Part shown: one piece after another, positions 1 to 32,685 of the stretch
Layout of the letters: the number at the start of each line of letters is the position of its first letter
Position numbering within the stretch: the stretch's first letter is position 1
Assembly (NCBI GenBank): GCA_044892505.1
Contig: CM097882.1
Coordinates: 153,202,001 to 153,266,000 of the forward strand
DNA: 64,000 nt
DNA from: Schmidtea nova
Lineage: Eukaryota
Reading direction: 5' to 3'
The notes under the pieces: generated by a model
The model's input: the letters and a program-made list of their open reading frames with translations, nothing else
The model's database searches: none
What the model was told of the DNA's origin: nothing
Position numbers and translations under genes: made by a program

Positions 1-838
1 GATGAAATATTTGTTGCTTTTAACTTTAAAACTTCAAAATAGTTATTGATAACCGACCTAGTTTCATCAATTAAACGATTGTCTTCTTGTCCAACGCTAG
101 TGATTTTTCTGACCGAAAATTCATTTCTATTCATAAAGTTTTCAATCCAGCAATTACTTCCTATGAAATCATTTAATGATAAAGAAGCTGCAATTTTTTT
201 TGCTTGCTCACGCAGGGTGTTGTAAGAAATTAGCCGTTTATTTGTTTTTCTCTCAAAAGCCAACAAAACCTTTAGCTTCTCTTCTAACTCAGGAAAAAAC
301 GCATTTCTACCGGATCCTATGCAAAAGATTGTTGATTTTCTTTTACTTCACATATTTTATTCTCCTTCATTTTCCAATCCCGCACCATTTTGTTTGTTAT
401 TCCACAGTCCTTCGCTGTTTTGCCTATGTTGTTGTTGTTTCTAGATTTTCTTTTGTGCTGTACGACCTTCTTTTCATGGGATATAAATATTAAAATATAA
501 AATCCATAATATATAAAAATATTATAAATAAACTAAATAATTAAATTTTATTTATACCAGATTAATTAACCAAAATTGTAAATAATATTTAATAAATAAA
601 ATTACCTAAATAAAATTAATTCATGTAAACCATTTGATATTCTTTAAAAAATTAATAGAAAAATAATGATCAATGTCTTTTATTTTATAATCATAGAAAA
701 TAAATTTTAATTTTAATGTAAAAAAATAAAAAAATGCTTGAAAATAAAAAAATTCTTATTAAAAAAATAAAAATAAGACCCTTCAAAAATAAGACCTGGG
801 TCTTATTTTTGAGGGGTCTTATTTTCGAGTAAAACCGG
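1..838 (-). mobile_element. pogo/Tigger-superfamily DNA transposon, 5' part (degraded transposase N-terminus plus 5' TIR); continues beyond the window start
   Basis: The minus strand from ATG ~477 reads, with stops and frameshifts, MKRRSYSTKEN...IGSGRNAFFPELEEKL...TLREQAKKIAASLSLNDFIGSNCWIENFMNRNEFSVRKITSVGQ, a Brinker-like plus CENP-B/Tc5 HTH pattern. The terminus TA|CCGGTTTTACTCGAAAATAAGACCC is at 838, with repeated AATAAGACC subterminal motifs. Confidence 0.8.
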
Positions 839-1548
839 TACCTGACGAACTCATAATTGTTATAACTCTAATCAAACCTATACAGCGCCCCGATTTGATG
901 GGTAAAAATAAAAGATATGTGTATGGCTATTATAGATGGGGTGCAACGATTATAGGTTTTGAAAATGATCTAAATGTATTCAATTATCTAAATGAATTTA
1001 ATGATCCAGATGAATACTATGTTTTGGCGTTTTGAAATCCAAATATACTCATGGAGGTGAATGATACAAATAAGCTTAATGCTTTGAATCATCACCATTT
1101 TTAAAATTGTTAATTTAATAAAATTTCTTAAGGTAAGGAAGATTTTGTTTTAAATTTTTTAAATTATTTATTTTAAAATTGTATGTGTTTTTGATGAGGG
1201 AAAATTAATCCATAATTTTTATAAACAGACTTTGAGTAGTATTTAAATATTTATTATCAATTATTTTTAAAAATATTTTTTAAGTAGTAAGTAATCTATC
1301 TAGTTTACCAAGTAGTTAAATGAATACAATTTTATTACATGTATTCAGATATAATTTGCAATATAGATACAATACATATGCATAACATCATTCATATAAG
1401 TAAACAACATAAAAAATCATGAACTTTAATACATTCAATACATTTTGTCATGTGCATGTCATGCACTATAAAAATGCACGTATCTGATTGGTCGCACTCA
1501 AAGAAAGACGAGTAATGATAAAAGAAAAGAATTAGTCATAATCATAAA

Positions 1549-1965
1549 ATGATATCTGTTTTCAATATTCAGTAATCTATTCCAATCAAGAAAATATGTG
1601 ATTACTGAATGAAAAGAAGATTAAACGAATTTTCAAACCCGTTTAAAGTTTTCATTAGCATCAATATATTTTTCTTGTAAAAGGATATTGAATTCATCAA
1701 TTCAAGTTTAATTAATCAAGTCGCTATATTCAAACTTGATTGGAAAATTATATAAACAAAATAATGTTAGTGTAAACAAAGTTATATTGAAAATCAATAA
1801 AAATAGAAACGAAAATATATTCATCAACAATCGCAAAACACGTTTTAGTAATGCTTTTCAAACATTATATAATAAAAATAACGAAAACAGGTTCATCAAT
1901 ATTACAATTCAAGGATATAAAATGTTATTAGACTGAATTTGGAGAATAGATGGCTCTAGATTTGT
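1549..1965 (+). pseudogene. Degraded paralog of the Maverick ORF at 11509-11958 (relic of an older related element)
   Basis: Nucleotide similarity is clear by eye: atcataaaATGatatctgttttcaat...ccaatcaagaaaatat...caaacccgtt...attacaattcaaggatataaa...atttggagaat versus 11501-11958. This copy has stops and indels; the 66-aa ORF at 1736-1936 is its surviving piece (FINITIQGYK vs FISITIQGYK). Confidence 0.85.
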
Positions 1966-2075
1966 GTAGATTGTCCTAGATTAGTGTAAACTTGAATTTT
2001 AATAAATGTTGATAATTAATTTGGCCTTACATTATAAATTACGGCATTATAATAAAAAAAATTTATAATGACGTC

Positions 2076-2941
2076 AGTAGTACCATATGGGCTATCTACA
2101 CCACCAGTGCCCCCCCTCCCACTACCCCCCCCCCCCCCCGAAATTTTTTTTTTTTTTTTTTGAAATTTTTGAATTTTAAGGTCAAATTTTTACGCCATTT
2201 TGAATTTTAAGGTCAAATTTTTACGCCATTTTGAATTTTAAGGTCAAATTTTTACGCCATTTTGAAATTTAAGGTCAAATTTTTACGCCATTTTGAATTT
2301 TAAAGTTAATTTTGTACGCCATTTTGAATTTTAAGGTTAATTTTGTACGCCATTTTGAATTTTAAGGTTAATTTTTACGCCATTTTGAATTTCAAGGTCA
2401 AAGTGGTGTTAAAAATCAAAATTTTGTCGGCCATTTTGTTTTTCAAGTGGTGTTAAAAATCAAAATATTGTCGGCCATTTTGAATCGGCCATTTTGTTTT
2501 TCAAGTGGTGTTAAAAATCAAAATATTGTCGGCCATTTTGAATCGTCCATTTTGTTTTTCAAGTGGTGTTTAAAATCAAAATATTGTCGGCCATTTTGAA
2601 TTTTAAGGTTAATTTTCTACGCCATTTTGAATTTCAAGGTCAAAGTGGTGTTAAAAATCAAAATATTGTTGGCCATTTTGAATCGGCCATTTTGTTTTTC
2701 AAGTGGTGTTAAAAATCAAAATATTGTCGGCCATTTTGAATCAGCCATTTTGATTCTGCCATTTTGAATCGGCCATTTTGTTTTTCAAGTGGTGTTAAAA
2801 ATCAAAATATTGTCGGCCATTTTGAATCGGCCATTTTGTTTTCAAGTGGTGTTAAAAATCAAAATATTTTCAATGTCAAAGTGGTGTTAAAAAACCAAAA
2901 TATTTAGCGAATTTTTTCTATTACATTATTATCTAGATACT
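2076..2941 (+). repeat. Left terminal inverted repeat of the Maverick, built of ~31-bp and ~57-bp tandem units
   Basis: Reverse complement of 12330-12965 from the terminus to ...TTACATTATTATCTAGATAC. Units are TTTTGAATTTTAAGGTCAAATTTTTACGCCA and TTTTGTTTTTCAAGTGGTGTTAAAAATCAAAATATTGTCGGCCATTTTGAATCGGCCA; copy number differs between the two TIRs. Confidence 0.95.
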
Positions 2942-3324
2942 AGTACCATATGGGCTATCTACACCACCAGTGCCCCCCTCTCCCTACCCCCCCCCCCCCC
3001 GAATTTTTTTTTTTTTTTTGAAATTTTTGAATTTTAAGGTCAAATTTTTACGCCATTTTGAATTTTAAGGTCAAATTTTTACGCCATTTTGAATTTTAAG
3101 GTCAAAATTTTACGCCATTTTGAATTTTAAAGTTAATTTTGTACGCCATTTTGAATTTTAAGGTTTATTTTGTACGCCATTTTGAATTTTAATGTTAATT
3201 TTGTTCGCCATTTTGAATTTTAAGGTTAATTTTGTATGCCATTTTGAATTTTAAGGTTAATTTTTACGCCATTTTGAATTTCAAGGTCAAAGTGGTGTTA
3301 AAAATCAAAATATTGTCGGCCATT
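2942..3324 (+). repeat. Second, partial tandem copy of the left TIR
   Basis: Restarts at TAGTACCATATGGGCTATCTACACC (2941-2965), repeats the C-tract and the 31-bp units, and breaks off at ...TATTGTCGGCCATT (3324). Confidence 0.9.
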
Positions 3325-3340
3325 CTTAACAAATTCTTAC

Positions 3341-3906
3341 ATTTGTTTATTCTTCCTAAATTAGTCGTGGATCGATCATTTAGTCTTCCGCCATTATTAT
3401 TTTTCAGAGTTCTATCAATATTAATTCCTACTAAAAAAGTGATATAAAATATAACTATGAAGTAATAATTAAATTTACCATTCGATCCGTTTACAATAAT
3501 TTCATTAGATCCATTTACGTTAACTATGTTTCCATTTATGTTTCGTTTAATTCCTATTAAAAAGTGATATAAAATATAACTATAAAATAATAATTAAATT
3601 TACCATTCGATTCGTTTACAATTACTTCATCCGATCCATGTACAATAATTCCGCTTCCATTTATGTTTCGGTTAATTACTAATAAAAATTGATATAAAAT
3701 ACCAATTTTAAAATAATAATTAAATTTACCATTCGATCTGTTAGGGTTAAATACATTTGATACGTTTATTCTATTCGTTCTACTAGCATTTTCCAAATTA
3801 TTAATTTCTAAATAATGAATAACAATAATAATAAATAAAAAATAATAAAATACTTACCATTAACATTCTTGTTGTTGTTAATATTAGTGTTTCTGTAGTT
3901 TGACAT
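3341..3906 (-). CDS. Predicted multi-exon Asn-rich repeat protein (5 exons, 3'-truncated); not in the ORF track
   Basis: Exons 3906-3858, 3807-3730, 3678-3604, 3553-3479 and 3427-3341 are separated by 50, 51, 50 and 51-nt GT-AG introns, all phase 1. They splice into an open frame: MSNYRNTNINNNKNVNEINNLENASRTNRINVSNVFNPNRSNVINRNINGSGIIVHGSDEVIVNESNGIKRNINGNIVNVNGSNEIIVNGSNGINIDRTLKNNNGGRLNDRSTTNLGRINK. A fifth donor GTAAGA at 3340 is also phase 1. Confidence 0.7.
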
Positions 3907-4240
3907 AATTAATTAATTAAATATATTTTATATTTCGAATTTTATGATATAGTAAAAAGTGATTAAATTAATGAAAACATCTCTTTATATATCAGCTATT
4001 GCATAATATTTATTCAGCCAATTAAAATCGATTATAACTAAATAATTTTACACTCGCACACATATGTACCGTCACACACATGATATGTTTATCGTCATAC
4101 ACACGGAATGTACATTCACACATAATTAGTCATTCATTGTGACCGCAGAGGTCATGCATTTGAATTGCAATAACGAAATATTGTTAAATAATAATAATAA
4201 AAATAATAATAATTGCAAAAACAATTTATTACAAAAACAT

Positions 4241-4660
4241 TTAATTTTTTAAATAATCTAATACACCCACCAAACAACATTTATAAGCACAGTTTGTATG
4301 ATCACGATATGGGCATGAGATATTGTCTGGAAAATCTTCGATTTCTTTAATATTATATTTGATTAATCTTAGATTGGGAAAGTAACTCTTCAAAACAGTA
4401 AGTTTGTCTTGATTAGTGACATAGAAAATTGCACCAACATCTTCGATTTCATTCAAAATACACTTTGGACAAAAGCTATCTTCTCCTTCATACCATTCCA
4501 ATCGATCGGATTCACCAATTCCAGCCCAAAAAGGAACATCATTATATATCCAATACTTTGGTCGAAAAATATTATTTACATTCATAATACATAGTTCCTT
4601 AATAATTAACCCACCTGCATTATCATTATAACCATAAATATCAATAAAATAACAAGTCAT
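4241..4660 (-). CDS. Maverick accessory protein, possible degenerate DnaQ/DEDD-like fold with C-terminal Cys/His cluster (139 aa from ATG 4660)
   Basis: MTCYFIDIYGY...IIKELCI...LEWYEG...QDKLTVLKSYF...CPYRDHTNCAYKC resembles the D-x-E-G-F...KEL...W..G...K...L...C..H...CA pattern I recall from Maverick accessory ORFs. The expected catalytic Glu is replaced by Tyr. The function is inference. Confidence 0.5.
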   Translation of the reverse strand: MTCYFIDIYGYNDNAGGLIIKELCIMNVNNIFRPKYWIYNDVPFWAGIGESDRLEWYEGEDSFCPKCILNEIEDVGAIFYVTNQDKLTVLKSYFPNLRLIKYNIKEIEDFPDNISCPYRDHTNCAYKCCLVGVLDYLKN

Positions 4661-4694
4661 CTTTTTTATAAAAACATTTATTAAACTACATTGT

Positions 4695-5078
4695 TTATAC
4701 TTTGAACATAGAATTAAGCCATGCAAGGCAATGTTGACCACAAGTAATTGTTAATGGATGTTGATACCGAATTCGATTATATACAATAGGTTTACCTAAA
4801 GTTTGAAGTTTACTAACTAATAAACTTGGATAGTAACATCCGAATGGATCAAATGCATATACTTTGATTGGTTTCACATATACAGCAATCCAATGTTCAC
4901 CACCTAAAGTAGATGATTGAGTATTGACGACCATGGCTTGATTTATATCTAAATAAGGGATTTTATCTAGTGGATAGACGCCAATAAATTCATTTCCCAA
5001 TAATTGTTTTCCAATTCGATTAACCTGAATAGAACTAGATAAATAGATTTATTTGATAAATAATAAAACTTACTCCAT
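4695..5078 (-). CDS. Adenain-like cysteine protease (virion maturation protease) with a 39-nt intron at 5035-5073
   Basis: Catalytic motifs GEHWIA, FDPFG and YQ...TCGQHC. ATG-GA|GTAAGT...CTAG|T-TCT splices to MDSIQVNRIGKQLLGNEFIGVYPLD; unspliced, the frame stops immediately (ATG GAG TAA). Confidence 0.92.
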
Positions 5079-5119
5079 AACAAATTGTTAACTTAAACTT
5101 ATACATTTATAATGGTAGT

Positions 5120-6341
5120 TTAAACCAAAACTGTTCGATTGGCAGTAATTTGGATTTCATTTTCAAATACTCCATATATTATTACATGTACTGGTTCTTC
5201 ATTAGCTTTAGAAAACTTTATATCCAATCTCAAATTTCCATTTTGAGGTAATTGACTTTGATTTAAATCGAAATCCGGAGCCAAAACAAATGTAAAGAAA
5301 GGGTATTTGTTTTTTAAAATCGGCTAGTGTTATAACACAATTCAAATTCTTATCTAAATATCCCATATTTCTGACCATCGACTGCATATATGTAGTACAA
5401 TAATTATCATTTTCGAAATCTTGAGTATATGTTTCTCGATAATCAGTGTTTTTCGATAGAGATAGAGAAGTTACATTGAAATGTTTAAATTTCGAACTTG
5501 ATGCAGTATATGATCCATTGTATTGAGTTTCACTTTGAAATGCGACCAAAATAAAATTAGGCATTCTTCGATCGCCGAATATTTGTTCTTTGTAGAAAGA
5601 TGATGCACCTTTACCAATAGCGAATTGCACTATTTCTTTGGTTTTCATTGGATAAATTGCATGTTTTGAATTAAGTCCAACTTGATGTCCAGCTAATACA
5701 GATTGTTCAACACGAACACGACGAATCATTAATTTTGCATCAACTAATTGACATTTTGGTGCTCCACTTTTAGAATATAGTGATAATGCAGAATCTGATC
5801 GCTTCAGTCTGATGTGAACATTGACACCAGGAAGTAAATATTTCGGCTGATCCATGAAATCCAGTTGTAGGGAAGAACACATTGTGAATAGCTTTGAGCC
5901 TTTGATCCACGCTTTTCTCTCGTCAGAATCTCCATATCCCATTGGAGTAAGACAAGTTTCTTTGGTATCACCATTATAATTTAAAATAGTTTCGATTATT
6001 GCCTTGTGTGCATAAGTATTGTTTCCACCTTCAATCTTAATATTATTAAAACCAAGAATTGCGTCCTTGAAAAGAGTATGAAACATGAAATTGTTTGGTA
6101 TAACATCATCAGTTGCAGACAAATCTTTTTTATCGGCATTTACTACTTTTACTTGAACAGTTAGTAAAGTATCATTCAAATCCAAATATTCAGATTGAGA
6201 TCCGTTAATATAAAATTCAACATCATTTCTACCGTCTGTAATAGAATTCATGGGAAATACTTCTTCAAATGCTCCATATTCAATAACTGCTTGAGGTGAT
6301 GGTCGGTCAAAAAGACATAATTCAGATTTACCACAAATCAT
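5120..6341 (-). CDS. Double jelly-roll major capsid protein (hexon-like), with one frameshift at ~5310-5315
   Basis: Maverick MCP motifs: ELCLF, VEFYI...YLDLNDTLL, FLDFMDQPKYLLPGVNVHIRLKR, LMIRRVRV, MPNFILVAF. Removing one A from the A6 run restores the C-terminus KNKYPFFTFVLAPDFD...GNLRLDIKF...HVIIYGVFENEIQITANRTVLV* ending at 5120. Confidence 0.92.
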
Positions 6342-6724
6342 TTTGCAAATATAGTTCCATGTCCTTTCATTCGATTGTTTATATACCTTCGATGCTTTTT
6401 ACGTCTAGGCCCCACTTGTTCAGGTTCAGGTTCATCTTTATTAAACATACTTGCAACATTATGAATCATACTAGTCACAGTAGGCAAGACTTTACCAATG
6501 GCAGACAAAGCATTTGTTTTCAATGATGGTAATATTTTCTGATCATTCATGATGACATCTTTGGCAGTTTTTAAACCAAAACTACCGATTCTCTTAAGAA
6601 TTGGGAGTGCAAATCGCCCTATAGTTTTTAACCAACCTGATCCATACTGTTTACCAGCAAAATAAGGTAATTCACCACCAGTTTGGCTATTACTATACAA
6701 TGAAATTATATCTGGATTAATCAT
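6338..6724 (-). CDS. Small virion protein with adenain-type cleavage sites and an amphipathic helix (pVI/core-like)
   Basis: QTGG-ELPYFAG-KQYGSG-WLKTIGRFALPILKRIG; basic C-terminus RRKKHRR and MKGH|G. It lies directly upstream of, and overlaps, the MCP start. Confidence 0.75.
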   Translation of the reverse strand: MINPDIISLYSNSQTGGELPYFAGKQYGSGWLKTIGRFALPILKRIGSFGLKTAKDVIMNDQKILPSLKTNALSAIGKVLPTVTSMIHNVASMFNKDEPEPEQVGPRRKKHRRYINNRMKGHGTIFAK

Positions 6725-7764
6725 TTAATTTACGAAAATGTAATGTCAAATGTGTTTTTGAATCTTTTGGAAAATTTATTAATTTACCACTATCGTCACG
6801 GATATTTATTTCTATATTGTTTATACATGAAGTAGAAATAGGTAAATACATTGGATTATCCATTACTATTTGTACAACTTCATCCTGTTCATATTTGTCG
6901 ATCCATACAGATTTCAGTAGAGGAACCAGAGAATCACCGACAATTATTGGTTCAATAATGTTACTGTAAATGAACATTTGTTAATGATGAACAAGTATTT
7001 TTGGTTTCACAGTCCCATCAATAAGGTTTCGATCTCTATAAGTTTGTTTATTTAATCCTAAAGTATTGACCAAGTTTTTATCGAATGTAACTTCGCTAAT
7101 ATTATCGTTGAGACTGAATTGAAACCATTTGTTAATCTCTAGAGTTTTAAAGATATGGGAGCAGTTGAATGATAAATATTTAGATAAATCTTCCAATTGC
7201 ACTATATACAAATCATTTGCAAATGTAAATGTTTCTTCAATTTCTGCATCATAAGATATTGTTATCTTAATATCTTCTTTCAAATAACTATTCGGTTCAA
7301 ATAACACGAACTTTAATTGATATTCTTTCAGTTTACTTACAATTTTGAGTTGATTACTTCCCATTCGTTTTGCTTCTTCAATATTTTCAAATGTAATTGT
7401 ATATGGAGTAAAGTCGCAATTAATATTTAAACATCCATTATTGTAAAACATACTACAATGAGCAGCCAGATTCTGATTAGGAATTTTATAGAATCTATCA
7501 AAGTTGTTGATAATGAAAAGACCACTACATGTTATAGTTTCAATTCTCTTGTAATCAATCTTACATTGACTATAAAAATGGAAATGTATTGTACACAAAC
7601 GTGAAATCTTGCAATGCAACTTCCCAATTACCATCTAAATAAATCGGATTTTGAAGATTGACCATGAATTTACTGGCTTCATTATCTGGATGTATTAATG
7701 GACAGCTATTACTCGGTAATATAGTATAAAAATTCACTTTACTAGGTCTTTTGATGATATCCAT
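6717..7764 (-). pseudogene. Minor capsid protein (penton, single jelly-roll), split into three ORFs by a frameshift (~7573-7577) and an in-frame stop (6981-6983)
   Basis: N-terminus FYTILPSNS...PDNEASKFMVNLQNPIYLDGNWEVALQD and C-terminus MFIYSNIIEPIIVGDSLVPLLK...YLPI...INNIEINIRDDSG...HLTLHFRK are Maverick penton motifs. TAA-CAA-ATG joins ORFs 6981-7634 and 6717-6977 in the same frame. Confidence 0.85.
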
Positions 7765-8788
7765 GAAGGGTTTTGATATCCATGCCACGTTACGTAGTAT
7801 TGTTTATCCTTACCCACCATTTTAGTTTTTAATATTTTTTGAATTCTAAATACAGTACGCGGAGGAATAACTTGTAATTCTTGCTCGTAAAATTTCCCCC
7901 TAACTACATTATTGTCAGAGTCAGAAATAACATACATGACACGGTCTTGGCTAGTATTAATTTTTGAGATCTGAAATACCTCATCACTCCAATTACTATC
8001 AAAATTTTTGATGAATGGCGAAGCGCTAATCTTGCTAATTCGAACATGATCACCAATTTTATATTTCGGTTTATTTATACTAGTTGTTAATTTGTGAGAT
8101 CCAGTATTTTTCGTTGAAACATCAACAGGTCTCAATCCATTTATACCTTTATGTGACGAATGATTATAACTATGTATTATTTTTGGCAATACATTAATCC
8201 ATGTTTTATTACCTTGATGTACAAAATACTTTTTCAAACGATCTCTTAATGTACGATAAAATCGTTCAACATGGGCTGCTTTGAATTGAGAAAACACAGA
8301 GTAATGATTAATCCCGGCCAAAACTTCTTTAACTTTACTATTGTAAAATTCTTTACCTAAATTATAATTAAAAATGTATAGAATAAGTATATATTCTTAC
8401 CCAAATCAGTTTGTAAGTTTTTTGGACGACCGGATTTAAACATAGTTTTCATTGCAATAGCCATTTCATTTGCTGATTTAGTTTTGGTAGGAATAGCACG
8501 GGCAAATCTATTGAAGACATCGATACATGTTAAAATATATTTATATCCCTTGTTAATATTTGAATAGGGAATCATTTCCATCAAATCCATTTGCCACAAG
8601 TCGTTAATACCATATGTTTTATATGTTCTTGTTGGAAATCTTTTCAATGCTGGTTTGTTTAGACTGTATGCCAGTTGACCCGATAACCATTTTTGAGTCT
8701 CTTTTGTCGAGTTTGGGACTTTTTTCTTTAGCTTTTCGACTCCACCGAAACCGGCGGGATCTTTTGGGTTTGTCCATATCTTCTCCAT
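7734..8788 (-). CDS. Retroviral-like (c-int) integrase with C-terminal chromodomain and a 44-nt intron at 8357-8400
   Basis: WQMDLMEM, TCIDVFNRFA, LQTD..., VERFYRTLR (DDE core) and FRIQKIL...YYVTWHGY...SWI (chromodomain). Splicing TTGG|GTAAGA...TTTAG|GTAAAGAA gives LQTDLGKEFYNSKVKEVLAGINHY, joining the two track ORFs. Confidence 0.95.
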
Positions 8789-8852
8789 TGCAACAAGAAG
8801 AATTAAAATTTAATTTAAGATTAGGTAAATGACCAATCGGTAATTGACCCAT
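8619..8852 (-). CDS. Small basic ORF (77 aa, MG start, SCC) overlapping the integrase 5' end in another frame
   Basis: ATG in ACAATGG context, 3 nt after the stop of the upstream gene: MGQLPIGHLP...SSCCNG...KPKRSRRFRWSRKAK. No homology recognised. Confidence 0.35.
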   Translation of the reverse strand: MGQLPIGHLPNLKLNFNSSCCNGEDMDKPKRSRRFRWSRKAKEKSPKLDKRDSKMVIGSTGIQSKQTSIEKISNKNI

Positions 8853-8855
8853 TGT

Positions 8856-9401
8856 TTATGATGTTGAGGGTTTTCCTAGTAATCCTACACCACCTAATAA
8901 AGATAGTGCTAATGGTAACAATGTCGCAATAAAACCTCCATGTTGTTTATATATTATTTTTCGCATTTGTTTTTTATTTTTAGTATTTACGAGCGATAAT
9001 AATGGTTTCTTATGTTTGTTCAAAACAGTTTTATTTGATTTACTAATATTGATTTTACCTTTTACCACTTTAACTATAACATCAAGTAAATCATCAATTA
9101 CGTAATTGGGAAATGATTGTAAAATACTCATTCTTCTAATGCTTGGAGCCTTGAGTAATGCATTAAAAAACGGAAAACTGCGATGATTTTTAGATTTTTT
9201 ATTTATAGATTCCTTTGGAGCCTTTGACGTTTTTGGTTTTGAATTATGTGAAATAAGATTCATTCTTGGAAAATTTTCGGTGATTAATGTTTTAGGGGGT
9301 GTGAAACTAGTTTTAGACGGAATTATTGTTTCACGATTCTTTTTAATAACTTTTCTAAGTTTAGATAACTTTGGTTGTTTGGTACGTGCTTTAAGTATCA
9401 T
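8856..9401 (-). CDS. Lys-rich virion core-like protein with C-terminal cleavage motif and hydrophobic helix (ATG 9401)
   Basis: Highly basic. IDDLLDVIVKVVKGKI...HKKPLLSL...KQHGG|FIATLLPLALSLLGG matches the conserved Maverick protein normally found between ATPase and integrase. Confidence 0.75.
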   Translation of the reverse strand: MILKARTKQPKLSKLRKVIKKNRETIIPSKTSFTPPKTLITENFPRMNLISHNSKPKTSKAPKESINKKSKNHRSFPFFNALLKAPSIRRMSILQSFPNYVIDDLLDVIVKVVKGKINISKSNKTVLNKHKKPLLSLVNTKNKKQMRKIIYKQHGGFIATLLPLALSLLGGVGLLGKPSTS

Positions 9402-9422
9402 GATTAATTTCAAACATGATTT

Positions 9423-10046
9423 TTAACTTTGTTTATAAACCATGGCTCCTTCTTTGTTAAAAATATCGGTTCTAACACGTAATTCATCACTACATTGTTG
9501 AGTATAGTCAAGAAAAATATAACCATGTGGGACTTTAGTTGCATCTTGAAATGCATTGATCAAAAAATTTCGATTATTAGGGTAAGCCTGTCTTGCAAGA
9601 AAATCAATAACTGTGGCATCTCTAGGATTTTTAAAAATAACTAGATATTGAACATTTAAATTTCGAGTCCGATGACTGCCACCCTGATGAAATAAATTTT
9701 GAGTAATAAAAATAATTGTAACACCCTTGTGTCTTGCGATTTTTGTAAATAAATTATTAAAATCCTTTTCTTTATTTGCTTCTTGATACAAATCATCGAT
9801 AATAATCACATCACCACTTCGTAATCTAGACGACCAGTTTTTTTCAAATCCCTTTATTATTGTCATTTTAATCTTGCAGAATTGATCTTGAGTCATTCCA
9901 TGTTCATCATCAGCTCCCCTATGCCAATAAATTTTGTTAAACTTTGATTTGAATAATTTTGATTGTAATAATTTACAAACAAATAATGTTTTTCCACTTC
10001 CACTTGGACCTACAATTTGATAAACTGCATCATTTCTTAATTCCAT
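9423..10046 (-). CDS. A32/FtsK-like genome-packaging ATPase
   Basis: Walker A GPSGSGKT, Walker B IIIDD, ARHKG..IIFITQNLF and YLVIFKNPRD. First ATG is at 10046. Confidence 0.95.
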   Translation of the reverse strand: MELRNDAVYQIVGPSGSGKTLFVCKLLQSKLFKSKFNKIYWHRGADDEHGMTQDQFCKIKMTIIKGFEKNWSSRLRSGDVIIIDDLYQEANKEKDFNNLFTKIARHKGVTIIFITQNLFHQGGSHRTRNLNVQYLVIFKNPRDATVIDFLARQAYPNNRNFLINAFQDATKVPHGYIFLDYTQQCSDELRVRTDIFNKEGAMVYKQS

Positions 10047-10141
10047 TTTCAAATATTAATTGTTTATTGTTATTGTTTATATTTGTTTAAATTCATTATT
10101 TTACTTTTATCAAAATTATTTGAAAAATACTCAGTTAAATA

Positions 10142-10612
10142 ATGTTAAGCAACATAAATTACAAAGGCAGATGTTGTGTTTCCCATATGAAATTTCCAAA
10201 TGGTAAACCACAACAAATTGTGGATAGGAGTGGAAAGTATCCAATTATATTTTTCAAGTCAGGGAAATGTAGAATAATGGGATGTAAACAGTCTCTTAAA
10301 CCTGAAGATTTATTTTACGAAATAAATGATTTGCAAATACAATCAATTACAGTTACTACAGATATTGGAAATTGTGTCAATCTACACGAATTATCAAGAA
10401 ACATTGATTGTCTATTTGAACCAGAAATATTTCCGGCATTGAGATATACTAAGTATAACCCTTTATGTGTTAATATATTCAACAGTGGTAAAGTAGTTAT
10501 ACTTGGTATAAAAACATTAAACTATCAGGATTTGATTGATGAAATTATTAACGACATCAAATCAGTGATTGATGACGTGGAAATTTTGAATTTTTTATTA
10601 CTCATTGTATAA
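10142..10612 (+). CDS. TATA-binding-protein-like protein encoded inside the Maverick
   Basis: Two TBP half-repeats: IIFFKSGKCRIMG (cf. LIFSSGKMVCTG) and IQSITVTTDIG...NLHEL...FEPEIFPALRY...VNIFNSGKVVILG (cf. IQNMVGSCDV...YEPELFPGLIY...LIFVSGKVVLTG). Confidence 0.85.
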   Translation: MLSNINYKGRCCVSHMKFPNGKPQQIVDRSGKYPIIFFKSGKCRIMGCKQSLKPEDLFYEINDLQIQSITVTTDIGNCVNLHELSRNIDCLFEPEIFPALRYTKYNPLCVNIFNSGKVVILGIKTLNYQDLIDEIINDIKSVIDDVEILNFLLLIV

Positions 10613-10786
10613 TTACATAATAAAATACTTGATTTTGATTGGTTGACGGTGTGTTGAAATATTTAGTATATAACGCAGTTAATTTCATTAGATTTATATC
10701 AACAAAATGTCTTTAAATATGTCTAATGGTAAGAATCGATTATTTTATAGATATTTTTAACATTTTCATTCGTTTAAGATAAACTG

Positions 10787-11056
10787 ATGAGTGTTCTCAT
10801 TTCAAAGATGGAGGATCTATACCCTAAACTGATGCGAGAACTTGTATATTGTGCTCCGGAGCTCCTGCCATATAAGATTCAAGCTATTACCGGCATCGAT
10901 CTTAATGAAGTCCTGGCAGAACATCTACACAACTTAGATGATGATCTACCGAGCTGCAGCGCAAACATTGTCTGTGCATATAGATGTGATAGTTGTCTCT
11001 ATAGGACACAGAAATATCACAAGTGGCTACTACGAAAAGAACTTAGAAAATTATAA
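10787..11056 (+). CDS. Unknown 89-aa protein with Cys cluster (CSANIVCAYRCDSC)
   Basis: ATG-initiated ORF with higher GC than its flanks, inside the element and co-oriented with the TBP-like gene. Confidence 0.55.
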   Translation: MSVLISKMEDLYPKLMRELVYCAPELLPYKIQAITGIDLNEVLAEHLHNLDDDLPSCSANIVCAYRCDSCLYRTQKYHKWLLRKELRKL

Positions 11057-11508
11057 TTATTAATTTTATGGTAATAAATGTTTAGAAAGTGTTATAGTGT
11101 TTAATATTTGTTTACAACCTATTTTTATTGTTTAAGTCTTGTATGACTTTATTTAAGAGTTTTATATCATTGTTTTATTAGTGGAAAATAAAATTTATTT
11201 CTAGAAATTGAATTTATTGATGTAGTCATTTTAGTAATTTTTATTGGTGGAAAATTAAAAAAGTAATTTTAGGAATTAGTTTTTATATTTGTTTTATAAT
11301 TATTAAACTCATTGAAACTATATTTAAAAAATCATTAGCAATAGAGATGCAAAACATATGCAAAACATGTGCATGACATTAGTCATGAATGCACACAAAG
11401 GTCATGAACTTGCAAACATAATGTGTAATTCATATGAACGAATTTCATTGGATGCACACAAAAAATAACGAGTATAAATACAAGGATAAATTTATATATC
11501 ATCATAAA

Positions 11509-11958
11509 ATGCAATCTGTTTTCAGTTTCCAGAAATCAAGCCCAATCAAGAAAATATTTGAGGAGTCGAATGAAAATTCAAAGAAAATTAAACCAAATGT
11601 CAAACCCGTTCAAATGTTTCATGAACATCAAATGTTTTTCTTGGAAAAGGAAATTGAATTCAAATTCATTCATCCAGTTAATTTAGTCAAGTCACAATAT
11701 TCAAATTTTATGGGGAAAATATATAAACAAGATGTTGTTGCTGTTAATAAAGTTCTGATGAAAATCAATAAAAATTTGACATGTAATGAAAATGTATTCT
11801 TCAACAATCGTAACAGCCGATATCATGATGACTTTCAACCAATAGAATATAAAGATCATGAAAATTGGTTTATTTCTATTACAATTCAAGGATATAAAAT
11901 AGATGCTAAGGATGTTATGTCACCCATTTGGAGAATCGATAGCGCTAGACTTGCTTAA
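11509..11958 (+). CDS. Unknown Maverick protein (~149 aa), possibly an OB-fold ssDNA-binding protein
   Basis: Open ORF. The start is placed at ATG 11509 because the relic paralog shares atcataaaATG and a TATAAATA box lies at 11473-11480. The C-terminal ISITIQGYK...SPIWRI is reminiscent of viral SSB OB-fold ends (weak inference). Confidence 0.65.
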   Translation: MQSVFSFQKSSPIKKIFEESNENSKKIKPNVKPVQMFHEHQMFFLEKEIEFKFIHPVNLVKSQYSNFMGKIYKQDVVAVNKVLMKINKNLTCNENVFFNNRNSRYHDDFQPIEYKDHENWFISITIQGYKIDAKDVMSPIWRIDSARLA

Positions 11959-12329
11959 AATTTTTAATATATTTTTAATAAATGTTTAGTATATTTCATT
12001 TGTTGTCTTTTAAATAGTGAGCTGTGTATTTCTTTTATAGTTAACAGTGGTAAATATAGTGACTTGTGGTTCTTATATATAATAATAATTTGTATTATAT
12101 ATAATTATTATTATATAATAATAATAATTGCCAAATAATCGAAATATAATTTGTAATATAATAATTATATATAATAATAATGTGATAATTTTATTGTACT
12201 GTGAAGTAATTGTTTTAAGAATTAATAAATCTACTATTAAAATTGTAAGGTAAATAATTTTTTATTGTGCTAAATTTTTATTAACATTGAAAAATGAAGT
12301 TCTCGAAATACTTACCACAAATCATGCGA

Positions 12330-12965
12330 GTATCTAGATAATAATGTAATAGAAAAAATTCGCTAAATATTTTGGTTTTTTAACACCACTTTGACATTGA
12401 AAATATTTTGATTTTTAACACCACTTGAAAACAAAATGGCCGACTCAAAATGGCCGATTCAAAATGGCCGACAATATTTTGATTTTTAACACCACTTGAA
12501 AACAAAATGGCCGATTCAAAATGGCCGACAATATTTTGATTTTTAACACCACTTGAAAAACAAAATGGCCGGTTCAAAATGGCCGACAATATTTTGATTT
12601 TTAACACCACTTTGACCTTGAAATTCAAAATGGCGTAGAAAATTAACGTTAAAATTCAAAATGGCGTAGAAAATTAACTTTAAAATTCAAAATGGCGTAG
12701 TAAATTAACCTTAAAATTCAAAATGGCGTAGAAAATTAACTTTAAAATTCAAAATGGCGTAGAAAATTAACCTTAAAATTCAAAATGACGTACAAAATTA
12801 ACTTTAAAATTCAAAATGGCGTAAAACTTTGACCTTAAAATTCAAAATGGCGTAAAAATGTGACCTTAAAATTCAAAAATTTTAAAAAAAAAATTTAAAA
12901 AAATTCGGGGGGGGGGGTAGGGGGAGGGGGGCACTGGTGGTGTAGATAGCCCATATGGTACTTCT
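12330..12965 (-). repeat. Right terminal inverted repeat of the Maverick
   Basis: Reverse complement of the left TIR, with fewer repeat units. It has a G-tract at 12907-12931, and the terminus reads AGAAGT instead of AGTAGT. Confidence 0.95.
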
Positions 12966-13118
12966 GACGTCAATAATGACGTTATAAAAAAATATTAAAA
13001 AAATTTTGTGGGATGAGGGGTGTGCAAATATAATTATTAAAGGGACTCGAGTTATGGAAGAGGCTCGCTCGATTTTCATTGGTTATGAGTCATCGATGGC
13101 GTCATTTGATTTGTCGTA

Positions 13119-13169: not shown

Positions 13170-14058
13170 TCTCCGCTCTAGACTATTTTGTGCTTAACTT
13201 GTTTCTTATTTCCCCTTTTTATTTACGCTTTAAAGAAGAGTCATATTTTATGGAGGGGGAATAGTCTGACCAAGAATGTACTTAAAATGTAGAGACAACT
13301 ATATATGTATTTAAAATCGATGGACACTGGAAATTATTCAATAAATAAGTTTTTTTTAAAGATTATTCGCGTTATTTAAAGGATCTTACTTTTGATATAT
13401 TTAACCTGATATTTGTTAAATTAAATTTATATCAATTGTAATGATAAAGTTCTTAAGGCGCCAGATAAGAGTGCTATTTCTATTGAATTCTTTAAAAACC
13501 TTTAAGGTGCCTTATTGTTTGTCGATATCAAAGAATATTAAAATATAATAATATAATTAAAAATGGTTAACCTTTCTTAGCAATTAATAATATTTTCATT
13601 GAAAATATTATTCTGTTTAAATTAATAGAAAGACCAACAACTCTTAATCATATCAACAAATTTCATATTTACAGCAACATTGGAAAATAATTTGATTTTT
13701 GTTGTAAAGATTTATTTTATTATAATAAAAATAAATTGCTTTCAATTAACTTTTTCAAATTGAAGGTTTTTATAGCATTTTGTTCAAAATAAGAGCAGTA
13801 CAAAAATATAAAATGTAAAATCTTTAAGAATCCTTTTATTTAATTGTCTTTAAAAAATTTTAGGTTGTTTTCTTTTCCGTTTCAATCTGAAATTTCCAAG
13901 TTTATTTGCCTAACCAAAAACAGTATGTTTTCTTTAATCAGAAATTTTTTGATGACAAAATATTTTTCTGATAAGCAAAATTTTAAATCATATTATAACA
14001 TTTATAATGAAAAGAAATAAATATAAATTTTATTGTAGAATTGTTTAAATATATATTA

Positions 14059-17579: not shown

Positions 17580-19194
17580 GTATATCTTACTTAACTTTCA
17601 GTCTGTGCATTTGGTGTCGACTGGACCCCAGTAATTGTAAAATGTGATTCAATACGTTTTACACCAAACAAATATGCCAGTCAACTAGACTTGCTTCAAC
17701 TATGATATTACACACGCATTACTAAAAAGTATATCGAAAGAATATTATGTATTCTAACAGAATATATAAAAATGTATATGTACAAGACAATGGGAAATTT
17801 ACTATGCACAGACTGAGGGTTAATTTCACTTTCTAAACTTTAAAATATTTTTCACTTATTTATTTATTTACATATATATATATTATTAAAAATGCTTAAA
17901 ATTTTATTATTTATTTTCGCTCAAATAACCTGATAAATTAACTGTACAAATTGAGATGATACACANNNNNNNNNNNNNNNNNNNNNNNNNNNNNNNNNNN
18001 NNNNNNNNNNNNNNNNNNNNNNNNNNNNNNNNNNNNNNNNNNNNNNNNNNNNNNNNNNNNNNNNNNNNNNNNNNNNNNNNNNNNNNNNNNNNNNNNNNNN
18101 NNNNNNNNNNNNNNNNNNNNNNTCTGTTTTATTTTTTTCTGAGAACTTGCTTTTCAAAGGTTATAATGAGATTAATAAAACCTTTATTTTCTCAGTTAAT
18201 TTTAACAAAAAATGCCACCAAATAAATTAGTCAACATTCTATTCAAATTATATAAATTAATAAAAATTGTTAATTTCAAAAAAGAAATAAAATGCATCAT
18301 AAGAGATCAAATATTTTTCTTTGAATATTTCATAAACGCCCAAAAGTCTCATCAGAGGGTCCATAAACATGTGAACAGTTACATAACACACTTTAGCGAC
18401 GAATCTGCAAAAAAGAATATATTGTATTTTAAATACAACTGCTTAAATTTGGTTTTTATTTCAGTTGTTTACTTCTTATTTGTCATTTTTGCACAAATTG
18501 CAATAAATCGTTCTTTGAGGACTTGGGTTAAATTTATATAAAATAATTTGAGTAATTTTTAATCAATTTTCTTTCATTTATATTCTCTAAATTTATATAC
18601 TAATTTTCCTTTATTCGCATGAACGTTCTGAAAATTCATTTCTGTCATTTTATCAACTGCTTCAAAAGCACGCAATTTTCCTTTTCTTTGGAAAAAGTGA
18701 AAATTTGCTTNNNNNNNNNNNNNNNNNNNNNNNNNNNNNNNNNNNNNNNNNNNNNNNNNNNNNNNNNNNNNNNNNNNNNNNNNNNNNNNNNNNNNNNNNN
18801 NNNNNNNNNNNNNNNNNNNNNNNNNNNNNNNNNNNNNNNNNNNNNNNNNNNNNATTGCAGATAAGAAGAAATGTGCAATAAACATTTATTTAAAAAAAAT
18901 CTTCTTTCGCTGGTTAAAATTTTGCTTCTAGTAAAAATGTTAAAATTCTTCTGCGTTGTAACTTTTCTGAGTTTTCCAATTTTCTGCGTTTATAAATTTT
19001 CTGCGTTTATAAATTTTCTGCATTATAAATTTTTTGCGTTTTAAATTTCAAATCAATTATAAATTTCTTGCGTTTTGGATTTCAAATCAGATATCATTTT
19101 TTATTCTTTTAAACAAACTTTTTTTATAAATATCTGTTTTTTTTAATATAGATATGTAAATATAATATATTAAATTAGTTAAAATATAAATAAT

Positions 19195-21318: not shown

Positions 21319-22969
21319 ATTATTTTAGTGCCATGTNNNNNNNNNNNNNNNNNNNNNNNNNNNNNNNNNNNNNNNNNNNNNNNNNNNNNNNNNNNNNNNN
21401 NNNNNNNNNNNNNNNNNNNNNNNNNNNNNNNNNNNNNNNNNNNNNNNNNNNNNNNNNNNNNNNNNNNNNNNNNNNNNNNNNNNNNNNNNNNNNNNNNNNN
21501 NNNNNNNNNNNNNNNNNTGATAATAAACCATTATAAAAAACATATCACAAGAATAAAAATAACTTTAACATTGTAAGATTATAATATTATCTTTACTTTT
21601 CACCATTTGAGAAACAATAATTATTAACTGAGAAAAATATATTCAAAAGAAAAAAATTAATTTTCAATTTTTACAAATGATTTTCATTCAAAATCGACTG
21701 AAAAACTTCTCAAAATTTCAGCAAGAATTTATTTCATTTATTATAATAAAAATTAAATATAAAAAATCGAAAATTTTAATTTGTATAATGTTTATTATTT
21801 AATTAATTATATTTTAATATTTTGAATAATTTTAAATGTTATTTTCGAAAGACAAATCAAGATATGCAGTATTTGGAAGTGAATAAATTTTCTTAGATTT
21901 TAAAGATATTAAACTACTATTTACAAGCTTTAAGAAATTATTACAAATCTATTAAAAAATAACGAGATACAAATTAACCCTTAGTTTAAATTAAAAAACA
22001 TACATATTATTTAAATGATAATGATAAAAAAAATTTTTAAAAACAAAAATGCAAATTTTCTGTTAATAAATCCTTTTTTTATTTCAATTATGGATATCTG
22101 GAATTAATAAACAGCTCAAGTCACTCCAAAATAATATTATATTTCTTTCAATTTGATAATCATTGAAATATTTTATGTCTTTGATGTAAGAAGTTGAAAG
22201 ATATTCTCAACTTACTTTCTTGGAAAAATTGACTTGCCCTTGAAAGATAGAAAAAGGTATAATTGAGATGATTTTCAATATTACAAAAATAATTAATCAA
22301 ATTGATTAGGACTTGTTTTTTTTGTTTTTTTTTATTTCATCAAATTTCTTTTGAATTCACGAATTGTAGAAGAATTTAATTTATTCTATGACTTATACAA
22401 AAATAAATCTCTTTTGTAAAGTTTTGTGAAGATTTGCTTACGAATAGAGTTTCAGATTTCAATTGTGTAAAGAATTTTTTTTTATTATTGAAGTCTTTAT
22501 TATTTTCAAATTTTTATTTATTTTTTTAAGAAATAAATACTTATAATTTTAGTAAGGTTACAAATGTATTCTTTAAAATATTAAAAATAAATTAAAATTA
22601 AAAATAAAATAAATTAAAAATAAATTAAATAGTATGAAATTGAATACAGTCCAGTTGACATAAAATTACATTTATTACATCAATTATCTCTCAAGTGAGA
22701 ACTTGGTCGGAATCCATAAAAAACAAACAAAAAAGAAAAGAAAAGAAATTATTATTCGAAATCGTAAATTTTAAAAATTAAGTAAATATGAGGCTTTGAG
22801 GAGTCTGTCTTAATACCCTCTGTAGTGTACAGGGTTGAATTGAAATTGTTGTCGTTTTACTATTATTAGTAGTATTGCAGGTACGGAAACCCTCTTCAAT
22901 TATTTGTATGATTACGGTGGTAAATATTGTGGATTTAGATAAAAATATAATTATTTTTATATGTAATTA

Positions 22970-31400: not shown

Positions 31401-31558
31401 CTTGGTAACAAACTAACTATTGAACCGGAATCAACGAGAAAATTTATATTGTTGCTTTGCACCGTGAATGTTTCGTAGTCGCCGAATGTCGGTGCTGTCA
31501 TTGGCGACTTTAATTGTGTTCCGGCTTTTTGTTGTGGAAAGCACAAGGTGCGTTGCAC
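28475..31558 (-). CDS. pol: Pol polyprotein (PR-RT-RNaseH-IN), intact
   Basis: PR LVDSGS; RT CGDYRALN, KIDLQKAYHQI, YLDD; RNase H TDCSG, ELLAV, TDHKPL; IN H-H-C-C, HIDIVGP, SDQGRQFES, GKVERLH. It overlaps the gag end in the -1 frame. Confidence 0.97.
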   Translation of the reverse strand: MQRTLCFPQQKAGTQLKSPMTAPTFGDYETFTVQSNNINFLVDSGSIVSLLPSYLYQSLKEGNYNLCAANGSNIKTYGKQQLTININKTNYNWEFIIADVKQAIVGADFLAKYNLLVDCRNKKIIQNTSETEKYPNNKPNQENLKTLTNCDIGVITANTKKIQTEGLQTKNITKCEKTNADNSIPKEIKELLKNYPTITDKLSIETTNKCITKHAIITNGNPVHAKVRQLDNKKLTITKEIFDDLLENRIIQHSDSNWSSALMLKEKANGEWRACGDYRALNNITIPDKYPIPIINDIINRIHNPKYFSKIDLQKAYHQIPVREEDVKKTAIITPIGLYEYNRMPFGLKNAAATFQRFMDQILRNHRNTVAYLDDILIASTNKTEHMQDITEVLNTLNNHDLKINIKKCEFLKQEVRFLGHILNGNGTRPLDDKIKAIKEFPLPKTTRELRRFMGMINFYHKHIPKCTEILAPLNDLNTNKRNIKINWNKQLERVFEKAKTNLSNTSLLNYPDPNLTYILNTDCSGTAMGGTIYQEKHNEKKPIAFYSKKLKTHQMRYSTFDRELLAVHDTIKHFQYLLEGKEFEVYTDHKPLVNAMNMKLPSPRQIRQLNYISQFNCEIKYIAGAANICADTLSRIETETNAISMIPTVNQETMRNKQERTINNFPKLNSLILKEIDGIWYDVSNEHNIRLIVPEEHRTELIKQFHNIYHPGTKATYELMHTKVVWPNMRKDIKEYVSSCINCQKNKITTKFKTTKIEFPKTEPFQTIHIDIVGPLPPNNKQKYLLTIIDRYTNWFEAIPIKEISAATICRKLEINWFARYGCPKTIISDQGRQFESDLFKGLCSKYKIKKVRTTAYNPQSNGKVERLHRSLKQAIRTKADDRNWLEKLPEILIGLRNNPSSLTNKSPSQLTFGHSTNLPNLIDNYKNPDKTYKNRTLTSQNEPKGVLMDNDNKQTKTNLRVDMVLIKKPFTSGFESKYEGPYKLLELDKNVGTLVINNRKVRVNIRRLKPYHYNNQNLHSTPHTA

Positions 31559-32511: not shown

Positions 32512-32685
32512 TTCTATATTCTTGCTGTTTGTTTATGTGAAAAAAAATGAGATTGGTTGAAGGATATAGCCTACTGTGTTCGGCTAACAGAGTCAACTAT
32601 CCTTTATAGCTCTATCTAATAGCTATTCTAAAAGGCGTAGTGATTGAAATAACAATATTCGGCGATTGTGTGTTATATTTTTTTG

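What the first reader, a model, noticed from the sequence alone, without database searches (positions are those of the whole stretch)
2076..12965. Polymerase-less Maverick/adintovirus-like provirus with intact ends and a full virion gene set
Seen: both TIRs, a 6-bp TSD, and ATPase, integrase, penton, MCP, adenain and two core/lytic-type genes in one compact, overlapping minus-strand block. I find no ORF with PolB exonuclease or polymerase motifs and no space for a ~1000-aa gene. Established: canonical Polintons are ~15-20 kb and defined by pPolB plus integrase. Inference: it is either a satellite-like lineage that packages and integrates itself but borrows replication (from a helper Maverick or the host), or a single deletion derivative. 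The rearrangement at ~3324 favours the second reading and must be excluded first.
Basis: partly seen in the sequence, partly recalled or inferred. Interest (0 to 1): 0.85.

Follow-up and report, generated by a model that had tools for sequence, protein, structure and literature searches.

The report
Polymerase-less, decayed Maverick-type provirus
This is a real integrated Maverick/Polinton-type virus-like element that has no DNA polymerase gene. Two of its capsid genes are broken and its left end is rearranged, so it is most likely a defective deletion copy and not a new self-sufficient kind of element.

Summary
A 10,890-bp element (2076-12965) lies between a 6-bp direct repeat (GACGTC) and long terminal inverted repeats. 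It encodes an A32-type packaging ATPase, an rve integrase with a chromodomain, an adenain-like protease and a double jelly-roll major capsid protein. No polymerase, helicase or primase family is detectable, and the largest unassigned gap is 377 bp.

The gene set is not intact. The capsid gene has one frameshift. The penton-like gene has one frameshift and one in-frame stop. The integrase is read in two frames. The penton assignment was not confirmed by fold search.

The left terminus is present twice. The inner copy breaks off after about 385 nt and abuts a gene whose reading frame runs into repeat sequence, which looks like a rearrangement scar.

Relatives' capsid genes and a conserved short TBP-like gene share five contig lengths of 14-22 kb, all longer than this element.

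PolB-lacking polintons flanked by inverted repeats are already reported in butterflies.

Best reading: a defective deletion derivative (0.55). A naturally replicase-less lineage stays possible (0.2).

I did not fetch relatives' DNA; that step is referred.

The parts
2070..2075 (.). left copy of the 6-bp target-site duplication (GACGTC)
   Evidence: read directly; identical hexamer at 12966-12971
2076..2940 (.). outer left terminal repeat arm: terminus, 31-bp tandem units (7.6 copies), 58-bp tandem units, inner unique segment
   Evidence: The inner unique 104 nt are 100% identical to the right arm, and the first 57 nt of the terminus are 96.5% identical.
2941..3324 (.). second, truncated copy of the left terminus: terminus plus 8.6 copies of the 31-bp unit, breaking off at the start of the 58-bp unit zone
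   Evidence: It is colinear with the right arm for about 390 nt at 91.6% identity and then diverges. The three terminal copies are about equally diverged.
3267..3906 (-). Asn-rich repeat gene candidate with 125-bp tandem units that look like exon plus short GT..AG intron. Its last reading frame continues into terminal-repeat sequence.
   Evidence: No Pfam match. The splice model rests on my reading only; the exons were not joined.
4241..4741 (-). ORF of 166 aa, Cys-rich (10 Cys), function unknown
   Evidence: no family or PDB match
4695..5048 (-). adenain-like cysteine protease (short form)
   Evidence: Pfam Peptidase_C5, E 8.6e-6. Weak PDB sequence hits to adenovirus protease, E 0.045. A relative's fused gene model ends at about the same place. 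There is no ATG upstream of the conserved domain in this frame.
5123..6341 (-). major capsid protein, double jelly-roll; broken by 1 frameshift
   Evidence: 108 relatives of about 405-410 aa. All 50 tested relatives align end to end in 2 pieces in 2 frames, with no intron-sized gap. AlphaFold model pLDDT 83.9. Foldseek top hits are iridovirus, PBCV-1 and vaccinia D13 capsid proteins, E 6e-10 to 1e-7.
6338..6724 (-). ORF of 128 aa, basic (pI 10.2), function unknown
6720..7788 (-). penton-like (minor capsid candidate) gene; broken by 1 frameshift and 1 in-frame stop
   Evidence: 22 relatives, full length 336-362 aa, colinear with this span. The model of the longest piece is beta-rich, pLDDT 90.2. 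No significant penton hit in PDB or BFVD.
7734..8788 (-). integrase: rve core plus C-terminal chromodomain, read in two frames (1 frame change; a short intron is an untested alternative)
   Evidence: Pfam rve E 1.2e-8, Chromo E 0.004. A relative's gene model fuses the integrase C-terminus to the start of the penton-like gene, which gives the same gene order.
8856..9413 (-). ORF of 185 aa, very basic (pI 11.2, 22% K+R) with a C-terminal hydrophobic segment
9423..10052 (-). A32/FtsK-type genome-packaging ATPase
   Evidence: Pfam Pox_A32 E 2.8e-6 and P-loop families
10142..10612 (+). short TBP-like protein (156 aa): one full TBP repeat preceded by a partial one; a conserved gene of this element lineage
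   Evidence: Pfam TBP E 1e-14. PDB TBPs match at E 5.5e-15 for the single sequence and 7.6e-21 for the family profile. 110 relatives of about 145-155 aa. Five contig lengths are shared with capsid relatives.
10787..11056 (+). ORF of 89 aa, function unknown
11434..11958 (+). ORF of 174 aa with no detectable homologue; a decayed paralogue lies in the left flank
   Evidence: no hits; paralogue at 1097-2023
12313..12965 (.). right terminal repeat arm: inner unique segment, 58-bp units, 31-bp units (8.5 copies), terminus
12966..12971 (.). right copy of the 6-bp target-site duplication (GACGTC)

Best explanation
The locus is an integrated copy of a Maverick/Polinton-type (Polintoviricetes-like) element. 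Its lineage also carries a short TBP-like gene.

Shown: it entered this site by an rve-integrase type of joining, which left a 6-bp duplication around long inverted termini. It keeps the capsid, packaging, protease and integrase genes. It has no replication gene of any recognisable kind.

Inferred: the replication module was lost in a rearrangement at the left end. That rearrangement also left a second, truncated copy of the terminus and fused a neighbouring gene to repeat sequence. The loss happened either in place, or in a defective genome that was integrated as such.

In its present state, with a capsid frameshift and a penton-like frameshift and stop, it can only be copied passively with the host chromosome. 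It is a defective derivative, not a self-sufficient new kind of element.
For: - Bounds, target-site duplication and termini.
- Gene identities.
- No polymerase, helicase or primase family at E <= 1 in 51 six-frame intervals of the non-core regions. None elsewhere in the window. The largest unassigned gap is 377 bp.
- Scar at the left end: the inner terminal copy is colinear with the right arm for about 390 nt only, then joins unrelated sequence. The adjacent gene's last frame reads on into repeat sequence.
- Broken genes: capsid 1 frameshift; penton-like 1 frameshift and 1 stop.
- Relatives appear larger. Capsid and TBP-like relatives share the contig lengths 14413, 16321, 17960, 20066 and 22064. 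One capsid cluster recurs on contigs of 13.9-16.3 kb in independent assemblies. This element is 10.9 kb, or 10.0 kb counted from the inner terminus.
- Precedent: polB-lacking, TIR-flanked polintons coexist with polB-bearing near-identical copies in Pieris (bioRxiv 10.1101/2025.02.07.637071).
Against: - No other copy of this element and no gene map of any relative was examined, so it is not shown that relatives carry a polymerase. The contig-length argument is indirect, because contigs may include flanking DNA.
- The three terminal copies are about equally diverged, so the duplication of the terminus is as old as the insertion. This fits a rearranged genome that was mobile as such.
- The inner unique 104 nt of the outer left arm and the right arm are identical, so the insertion need not be old.
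- The capsid frameshift zone holds a 6-nt homopolymer, so it could be a sequencing error.
Confidence: 0.55

Rival explanations
1. It belongs to a naturally replicase-less lineage that keeps capsid, packaging, protease and integrase genes and its own TBP-like factor. Such a lineage would depend on a polymerase supplied by an autonomous relative or by the host, in a satellite-like way.
For: - There is no polymerase remnant at all, not even a fragment.
- The gene layout is tight, with no large gap.
- The target-site duplication brackets the rearranged element as a whole, and the terminal copies are equally diverged. The element may therefore have integrated in its present layout.
- The lineage is widespread: 108 capsid and 110 TBP-like relatives.
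- PolB-lacking polintons that stayed mobile are reported.
- Group 2 Maverick-Polintons have variable replication modules (bioRxiv 10.64898/2026.06.19.733378).
Against: - Relatives with both marker genes lie on contigs 3.5-11 kb longer than this element.
- The truncated inner terminus and the gene fused to repeat sequence look like a one-off scar.
- The copy itself is broken in two capsid genes.
Confidence: 0.2
2. The left-end structure, and with it the missing module, is an assembly artefact. Tandem 31-bp and 58-bp units in the termini of several copies may have been mis-joined or collapsed in a draft assembly.
For: - The window has seven N runs, so it comes from a scaffolded draft.
- The termini are made of tandem repeats, which are prone to collapse.
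- The left terminus appears twice.
Against: - Neither junction lies between like repeats. One joins the inner unique segment to a terminus; the other joins a repeat unit to unique sequence.
- There is no N run inside the element.
- A matching 6-bp duplication brackets the whole element.
Confidence: 0.1
3. The replication module was displaced when foreign or repeated DNA was taken up. The right-hand plus-strand segment around the 174-aa ORF is a genomic repeat, not an ancestral gene of the element, much as TE cargo coincides with polB loss in butterfly polintons.
For: - Element 11078-12002 has a 66%-identical paralogue in the left flank at 1097-2023, outside the element.
- The 174-aa ORF has no homologue among the proteins searched, although capsid and TBP-like genes have over 100 each.
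- Precedent.
Against: - The flank copy may equally be the relic of an older element of the same family into which this one inserted.
- There is a weak, same-order match of the right flank (13545-13620) to the inner repeat segment.
- No transposon ends or target duplication were seen around the segment.
Confidence: 0.1

Closest known systems
Maverick/Polinton elements (class Polintoviricetes; 'adintoviruses' in animals)
   Same: 6-bp target-site duplication, long terminal inverted repeats, rve integrase with chromodomain, A32-type ATPase, adenain-like protease and double jelly-roll capsid protein.
   Different: No protein-primed PolB, which the classical definition requires (PMC5499653 abstract). 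It is 10.9 kb, not 15-20 kb. The left terminus is duplicated.
polB-lacking, TIR-flanked polinton-related insertions in Pieris mannii (Igolkina et al., bioRxiv 10.1101/2025.02.07.637071)
   Same: A polinton gene set bounded by inverted repeats but without polB. The same open question arises of how such copies are propagated.
   Different: In Pieris the loss coincides with LINE or LTR cargo, and near-identical polB-bearing copies are documented. Here no such cargo and no sister copy could be shown. This copy also has broken capsid genes.
Group 2 Maverick-Polintons with substituted replication modules (Bellas and Sommaruga, bioRxiv 10.64898/2026.06.19.733378)
   Same: Maverick-type capsid, protease and integrase genes without pPolB.
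   Different: In group 2 the pPolB is replaced by helicase-polymerase or primase-polymerase fusions. Here no helicase or primase family was found. Group assignment was not testable.
Polinton-like viruses (PLVs)
   Same: Capsid and ATPase core genes, and frequent absence of pPolB.
   Different: PLVs mostly lack the rve integrase and, apart from the Gossevirus group, the cysteine protease. This element has both.
MELD viruses with TBP-like genes (Starrett et al. 2021, PMC8502044)
   Same: A mid-size linear dsDNA element that encodes a TBP homologue.
   Different: Those were described from non-animal datasets and carry PolB or other replicases. Here the TBP-like protein is a short, roughly 150-aa form with one full repeat.

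Membership tests
Maverick/Polinton (classical definition) | 6-bp target-site duplication | tested here: met
   GACGTC at 2070-2075 and 12966-12971
Maverick/Polinton (classical definition) | long terminal inverted repeats | tested here: met
   Arms of 865 and 653 nt. The inner 104 nt are identical. The left terminus is present twice.
Maverick/Polinton (classical definition) | retrovirus-like (rve) integrase | tested here: met
   Pfam rve E 1.2e-8 plus Chromo. The gene is read in two frames.
Maverick/Polinton (classical definition) | [quoted passage not shown] | tested here: not met
   No polymerase family at E <= 1 in 51 six-frame intervals. None in the rest of the window. Largest free gap 377 bp.
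Maverick/Polinton (virus-like module) | double jelly-roll major capsid protein | tested here: met
   Model pLDDT 83.9. Foldseek probability 1.0 to iridovirus, PBCV-1 and D13 capsid proteins.
Maverick/Polinton (virus-like module) | penton (single jelly-roll minor capsid protein) | tested here: inconclusive
   Conserved family of about 340 aa in the expected position. Confident beta-rich model. Best fold hits are not significant: E 5.5e-3 to a MATH domain, and E 0.035 to giant-virus 'minor capsid protein'.
Maverick/Polinton (virus-like module) | A32/FtsK-type packaging ATPase and adenain-like protease | tested here: met
   Pox_A32 E 2.8e-6; Peptidase_C5 E 8.6e-6
Group 2 Maverick-Polintons (substituted replicase) | helicase-polymerase or primase-polymerase gene in place of pPolB | tested here: not met
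   No helicase or primase family in the non-core intervals. The RNA_helicase hit belongs to the P-loop of the packaging ATPase.
Group 2 Maverick-Polintons (substituted replicase) | capsid and ATPase clustering with the group's profiles | not testable with these tools
   The published profile set is not available here.
Non-autonomous deletion derivative of a DNA transposon | internal breakpoint relative to an autonomous partner with the same termini | tested here: inconclusive
   A scar-like junction lies after the truncated inner terminus, but no partner copy is in hand.
Non-autonomous deletion derivative of a DNA transposon | several copies with different target duplications sharing the breakpoint | not tested
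   The window's proteins are absent from the protein collection. No second full copy lies in the window. Fetching relatives' DNA was referred.
Polinton-like viruses | capsid module without rve integrase or adenain-like protease | tested here: not met
   Both are present.
TATA-binding protein (for the 156-aa gene) | two TBP repeats forming the saddle | tested here: inconclusive
   One full repeat matches strongly, and it aligns to either repeat of cellular TBPs. The N-terminal 55 residues align only to the end of repeat 1 in microsporidian TBP.

The most novel reading that the evidence does not exclude
This could be a widespread Maverick lineage that has given up its own replicase for good. It would keep capsid, packaging, protease and integrase genes, and steer its transcription with its own one-repeat TBP-like factor. 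That would make it a satellite of autonomous Mavericks or of the host replication machinery. This locus would then be one decayed member.
Probability: 0.15. Interest if true: 0.65.

Novelty: new member of a known kind. Interest (0 to 1): 0.3.

Why it matters
If this polymerase-less layout were shared by many independent copies, it would show that virus-like Mavericks can spawn capsid-encoding dependants. That bears on how these elements spread and how replication modules turn over. As it stands, the locus is one more defective copy of a kind already reported.

The more useful by-product is descriptive. There is a large, unnamed lineage of Maverick-type elements marked by a conserved short TBP-like gene. 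It is seen at protein level in more than 100 metagenome and run-assembly clusters.

Tried and rejected
- Exact look-up of ten window proteins: none is in the collection, so sister copies in the same genome could not be reached.
- Homologue search for the 174-aa ORF: nothing. PDB sequence searches for the 166-aa and 174-aa ORFs: nothing.
- Capsid family profile against PDB sequences: nothing. The fold search was needed.
- Fold searches for the penton-like piece in PDB and BFVD: no significant match.
- Rfam on the whole window: no family.
- Testing the integrase splice model exon by exon: the first exon candidate matches rve profile positions 5-73, and the second is too short to score on its own, so the result is inconclusive.
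- Host identification: not achieved. There are only indirect hints: Ty3/gypsy, Mos1-type mariner and Tc5/pogo fragments, about 25% GC, and chimeric gene models of near relatives with SART3-like and formin-like parts.
- Dating the insertion from arm divergence: rejected as unreliable. The tandem-unit zones differ by 6-9% while the inner unique segment is identical.


Full report
**Observation.** The element runs from 2076 to 12965 (10,890 bp). The hexamer GACGTC lies immediately outside both ends, at 2070-2075 and 12966-12971. For one fixed pair of positions, a 6-bp match has a chance expectation of about 1 in 4096. The termini are near-perfect inverted copies: the first 57 nt are 96.5% identical. 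The arms are long and are built from 31-bp and 58-bp tandem units followed by an inner unique segment. The element contains no N run. All seven N runs of the window lie outside it and were left untouched.

**The ends are not simply intact.** The left terminus occurs twice.
- The outer arm (2076-2940) has every part of the right arm (12313-12965). Its inner unique 104 nt are 100% identical to the right arm.
- Directly inside it a second copy of the terminus begins (2941). It follows the right arm colinearly for about 390 nt at 91.6% identity, with the same number of 31-bp units. It then breaks off at about 3324, at the start of the 58-bp unit zone, and joins unrelated sequence.
- In a three-way alignment of the first roughly 400 nt, the three terminal copies are about equally diverged: 91-94% over substituted sites, with informative sites split 13/13/9. 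The duplication is therefore not clearly younger than the insertion.
- No further terminal copy exists in the window.

**Genes.** A compact minus-strand block (4241-10052) holds these genes, in order from the right:
- an A32-type packaging ATPase (Pfam Pox_A32, E 2.8e-6);
- a very basic 185-aa protein with a C-terminal hydrophobic segment;
- an integrase with an rve core (E 1.2e-8) and a weak chromodomain match;
- a penton-like gene;
- a basic 128-aa protein;
- the major capsid protein;
- an adenain-like protease (Peptidase_C5, E 8.6e-6);
- a Cys-rich 166-aa ORF.

These rest.

The capsid protein has no Pfam or PDB sequence match. A model built on 48 sequences is confident (pLDDT 83.9). It matches the double jelly-roll capsid proteins of an iridovirus, PBCV-1 and vaccinia D13 at E 6e-10 to 1e-7.

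The penton-like gene belongs to a conserved family of about 340 residues that is colinear with 6720-7788. Its longest piece folds confidently into a beta-rich domain (pLDDT 90.2). Neither PDB nor BFVD gave a significant match; the best were a MATH domain at E 5.5e-3 and giant-virus 'minor capsid protein' at E 0.035. I therefore call it penton-like and unconfirmed.

On the plus strand lie a TBP-like gene (10142-10612), an 89-aa ORF and a 174-aa ORF.

At the left, a minus-strand gene candidate (3267-3906) consists of 125-bp tandem units that read like exon plus short GT..AG intron. Its last frame continues into terminal-repeat sequence.

**State of the genes (counts only).**
- Capsid gene: one frameshift. 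All 50 tested relatives align end to end in two pieces in two frames, with no intron-sized gap.
- Penton-like gene: one frameshift and one in-frame stop.
- Integrase: one frame change. The stretch between its two frames has splice-like GT..AG bounds. That splice model was not predicted by a tool or shown to be shared by relatives. I searched the two exon candidates separately by reference (inconclusive) and left the joined step out.
- Protease: its frame has no ATG upstream of the conserved domain.
- ATPase and TBP-like genes: they look uninterrupted.

The capsid frameshift zone contains a 6-nt homopolymer, so a sequencing error cannot be ruled out there. The stop cannot be explained that way.

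**No replicase.** I scanned all 51 stop-free intervals of at least 30 codons, in six frames, in the two regions outside the core block (3217-4750 and 10041-12379). At E <= 1 no polymerase, helicase or primase family appeared; the only solid hit was TBP. The rest of the window holds only transposon fragments and two Ty3/gypsy-type elements. The largest unassigned stretch inside the element is 377 bp.

**Relatives, at protein level only.**
- The capsid protein has 108 relatives (35-79% identity, about 405-410 aa). The TBP-like protein has 110 (about 145-155 aa). Both sets come from the same unnamed metagenome and run-assembly sources.
- The two sets share the 'longest contig' values 14413, 16321, 17960, 20066 and 22064. 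I read this as co-location on the same contigs, which would make the TBP-like gene a conserved gene of this lineage.
- One capsid cluster recurs on contigs of 13.9-16.3 kb in independent assemblies. This suggests a unit some 3-5 kb longer than the element here. The argument is indirect, because contigs can include flanks.
- The family profile matches cellular and archaeal TBPs at E 7.6e-21, but only over one repeat, which aligns to either repeat of TBP.
- The window's own proteins are not in the collection, so sister copies in the same genome were out of reach.

**Flank.** Window 1097-2023, just left of the insertion site, is a 66%-identical and decayed paralogue of element 11078-12002. That stretch covers the 174-aa ORF and its upstream region. 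The ORF has no homologue elsewhere. Either the element inserted into the relic of an older family member, or the segment is a genomic repeat taken up by the element.

**Interpretation.**
- Shown: this is a Maverick-type integration with capsid, packaging, protease and integrase genes and no replicase. It has a rearranged left end and two broken capsid genes.
- Inferred: the replicase was lost by a rearrangement at the left end, either in place or in a defective genome that was integrated as such (confidence 0.55).
- A naturally replicase-less, satellite-like lineage remains possible (0.2). So do an assembly artefact (0.1) and loss linked to uptake of repeated DNA (0.1).

**Comparison with the literature.**
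- By the classical definition a Polinton encodes pPolB and an integrase (PMC5499653). This locus fails one defining feature, so I do not file it as a canonical member. I file it as a polymerase-less derivative or relative.
- PolB-lacking, TIR-flanked polintons that coexist with polB-bearing near-identical copies are already described in Pieris (bioRxiv 10.1101/2025.02.07.637071).
- Group 2 Maverick-Polintons with substituted replicases are also described (bioRxiv 10.64898/2026.06.19.733378).
- TBP-like genes have been noted in related mid-size viruses (PMC8502044).
- The finding is therefore a new member of a known kind.

**Limits and declarations.**
The gene maps of the related contigs would probably settle the question.
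- The host was not identified. The transposon content and short intron-like stretches suggest an AT-rich invertebrate, but this is inference.
- First slip: in my reasoning I recalled from memory stretches of a mariner transposase and of a cellular TBP.
- Second slip: my reasoning, and notebook entries 1 and 3, carry the ORF bounds of the integrase pieces as printed by the ORF tool, and these bracket its frame change.

Noticed in passing
window 1097-2023 (+): A decayed paralogue (66% identity over about 925 nt) of element 11078-12002, covering the 174-aa ORF and its upstream region. It sits in the host flank about 45 bp from the insertion site. It is either the relic of an older family member or an independent repeat.
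   Followed up: partly
window 10142-10612 (+): A short TBP-like protein with one full TBP repeat. It has 110 relatives of about 150 aa and shares five contig lengths with capsid relatives, so it looks like a hallmark gene of an unnamed Maverick-type lineage.
   Followed up: partly
window 3267-3906 (-): A gene candidate made of 125-bp tandem units that read as Asn-rich exon plus an intron of about 50 nt with GT..AG bounds. A TATA-like motif lies upstream of its ATG, and its last frame runs into terminal-repeat sequence.
   Followed up: partly
window 2167-2402, 3025-3291, 12615-12878 and 2427-2868, 12432-12612: The terminal arms are arrays of 31-bp and 58-bp units that share a short GCCATTTTG-type core. 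They are possible protein-binding sites. Unit numbers differ between the three terminal copies.
   Followed up: no
window 28475-32532 (-) and 55156-57332 (+): Two related Ty3/gypsy-type retroelements with a DUF7041-type gag. The first has a full 1027-aa pol (RT, RNase H, integrase). In the second, the ORF after gag keeps only the protease-like start and a C-terminal tail.
   Followed up: partly
window 3-347 (-), 40081-40562 (-), 60214-61318 (+): A Tc5/pogo transposase fragment and two Mos1-type mariner remnants (HTH_48). The window is a transposon-rich, very AT-rich region, with intergenic stretches down to 16-17% GC.
   Followed up: partly
window 17966-18122, 18711-18853, 21337-21517, 38921-39221, 39335-39655, 46412-46553, 51076-51250: Seven N runs, all outside the element. 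They were left as they are.
   Followed up: no
window 13545-13620: A weak match (65% over 81 nt, E 0.001) of the right flank to the inner unique segment of the terminal repeat, in the order expected if the element inserted into an older copy. It is too weak to rely on.
   Followed up: partly
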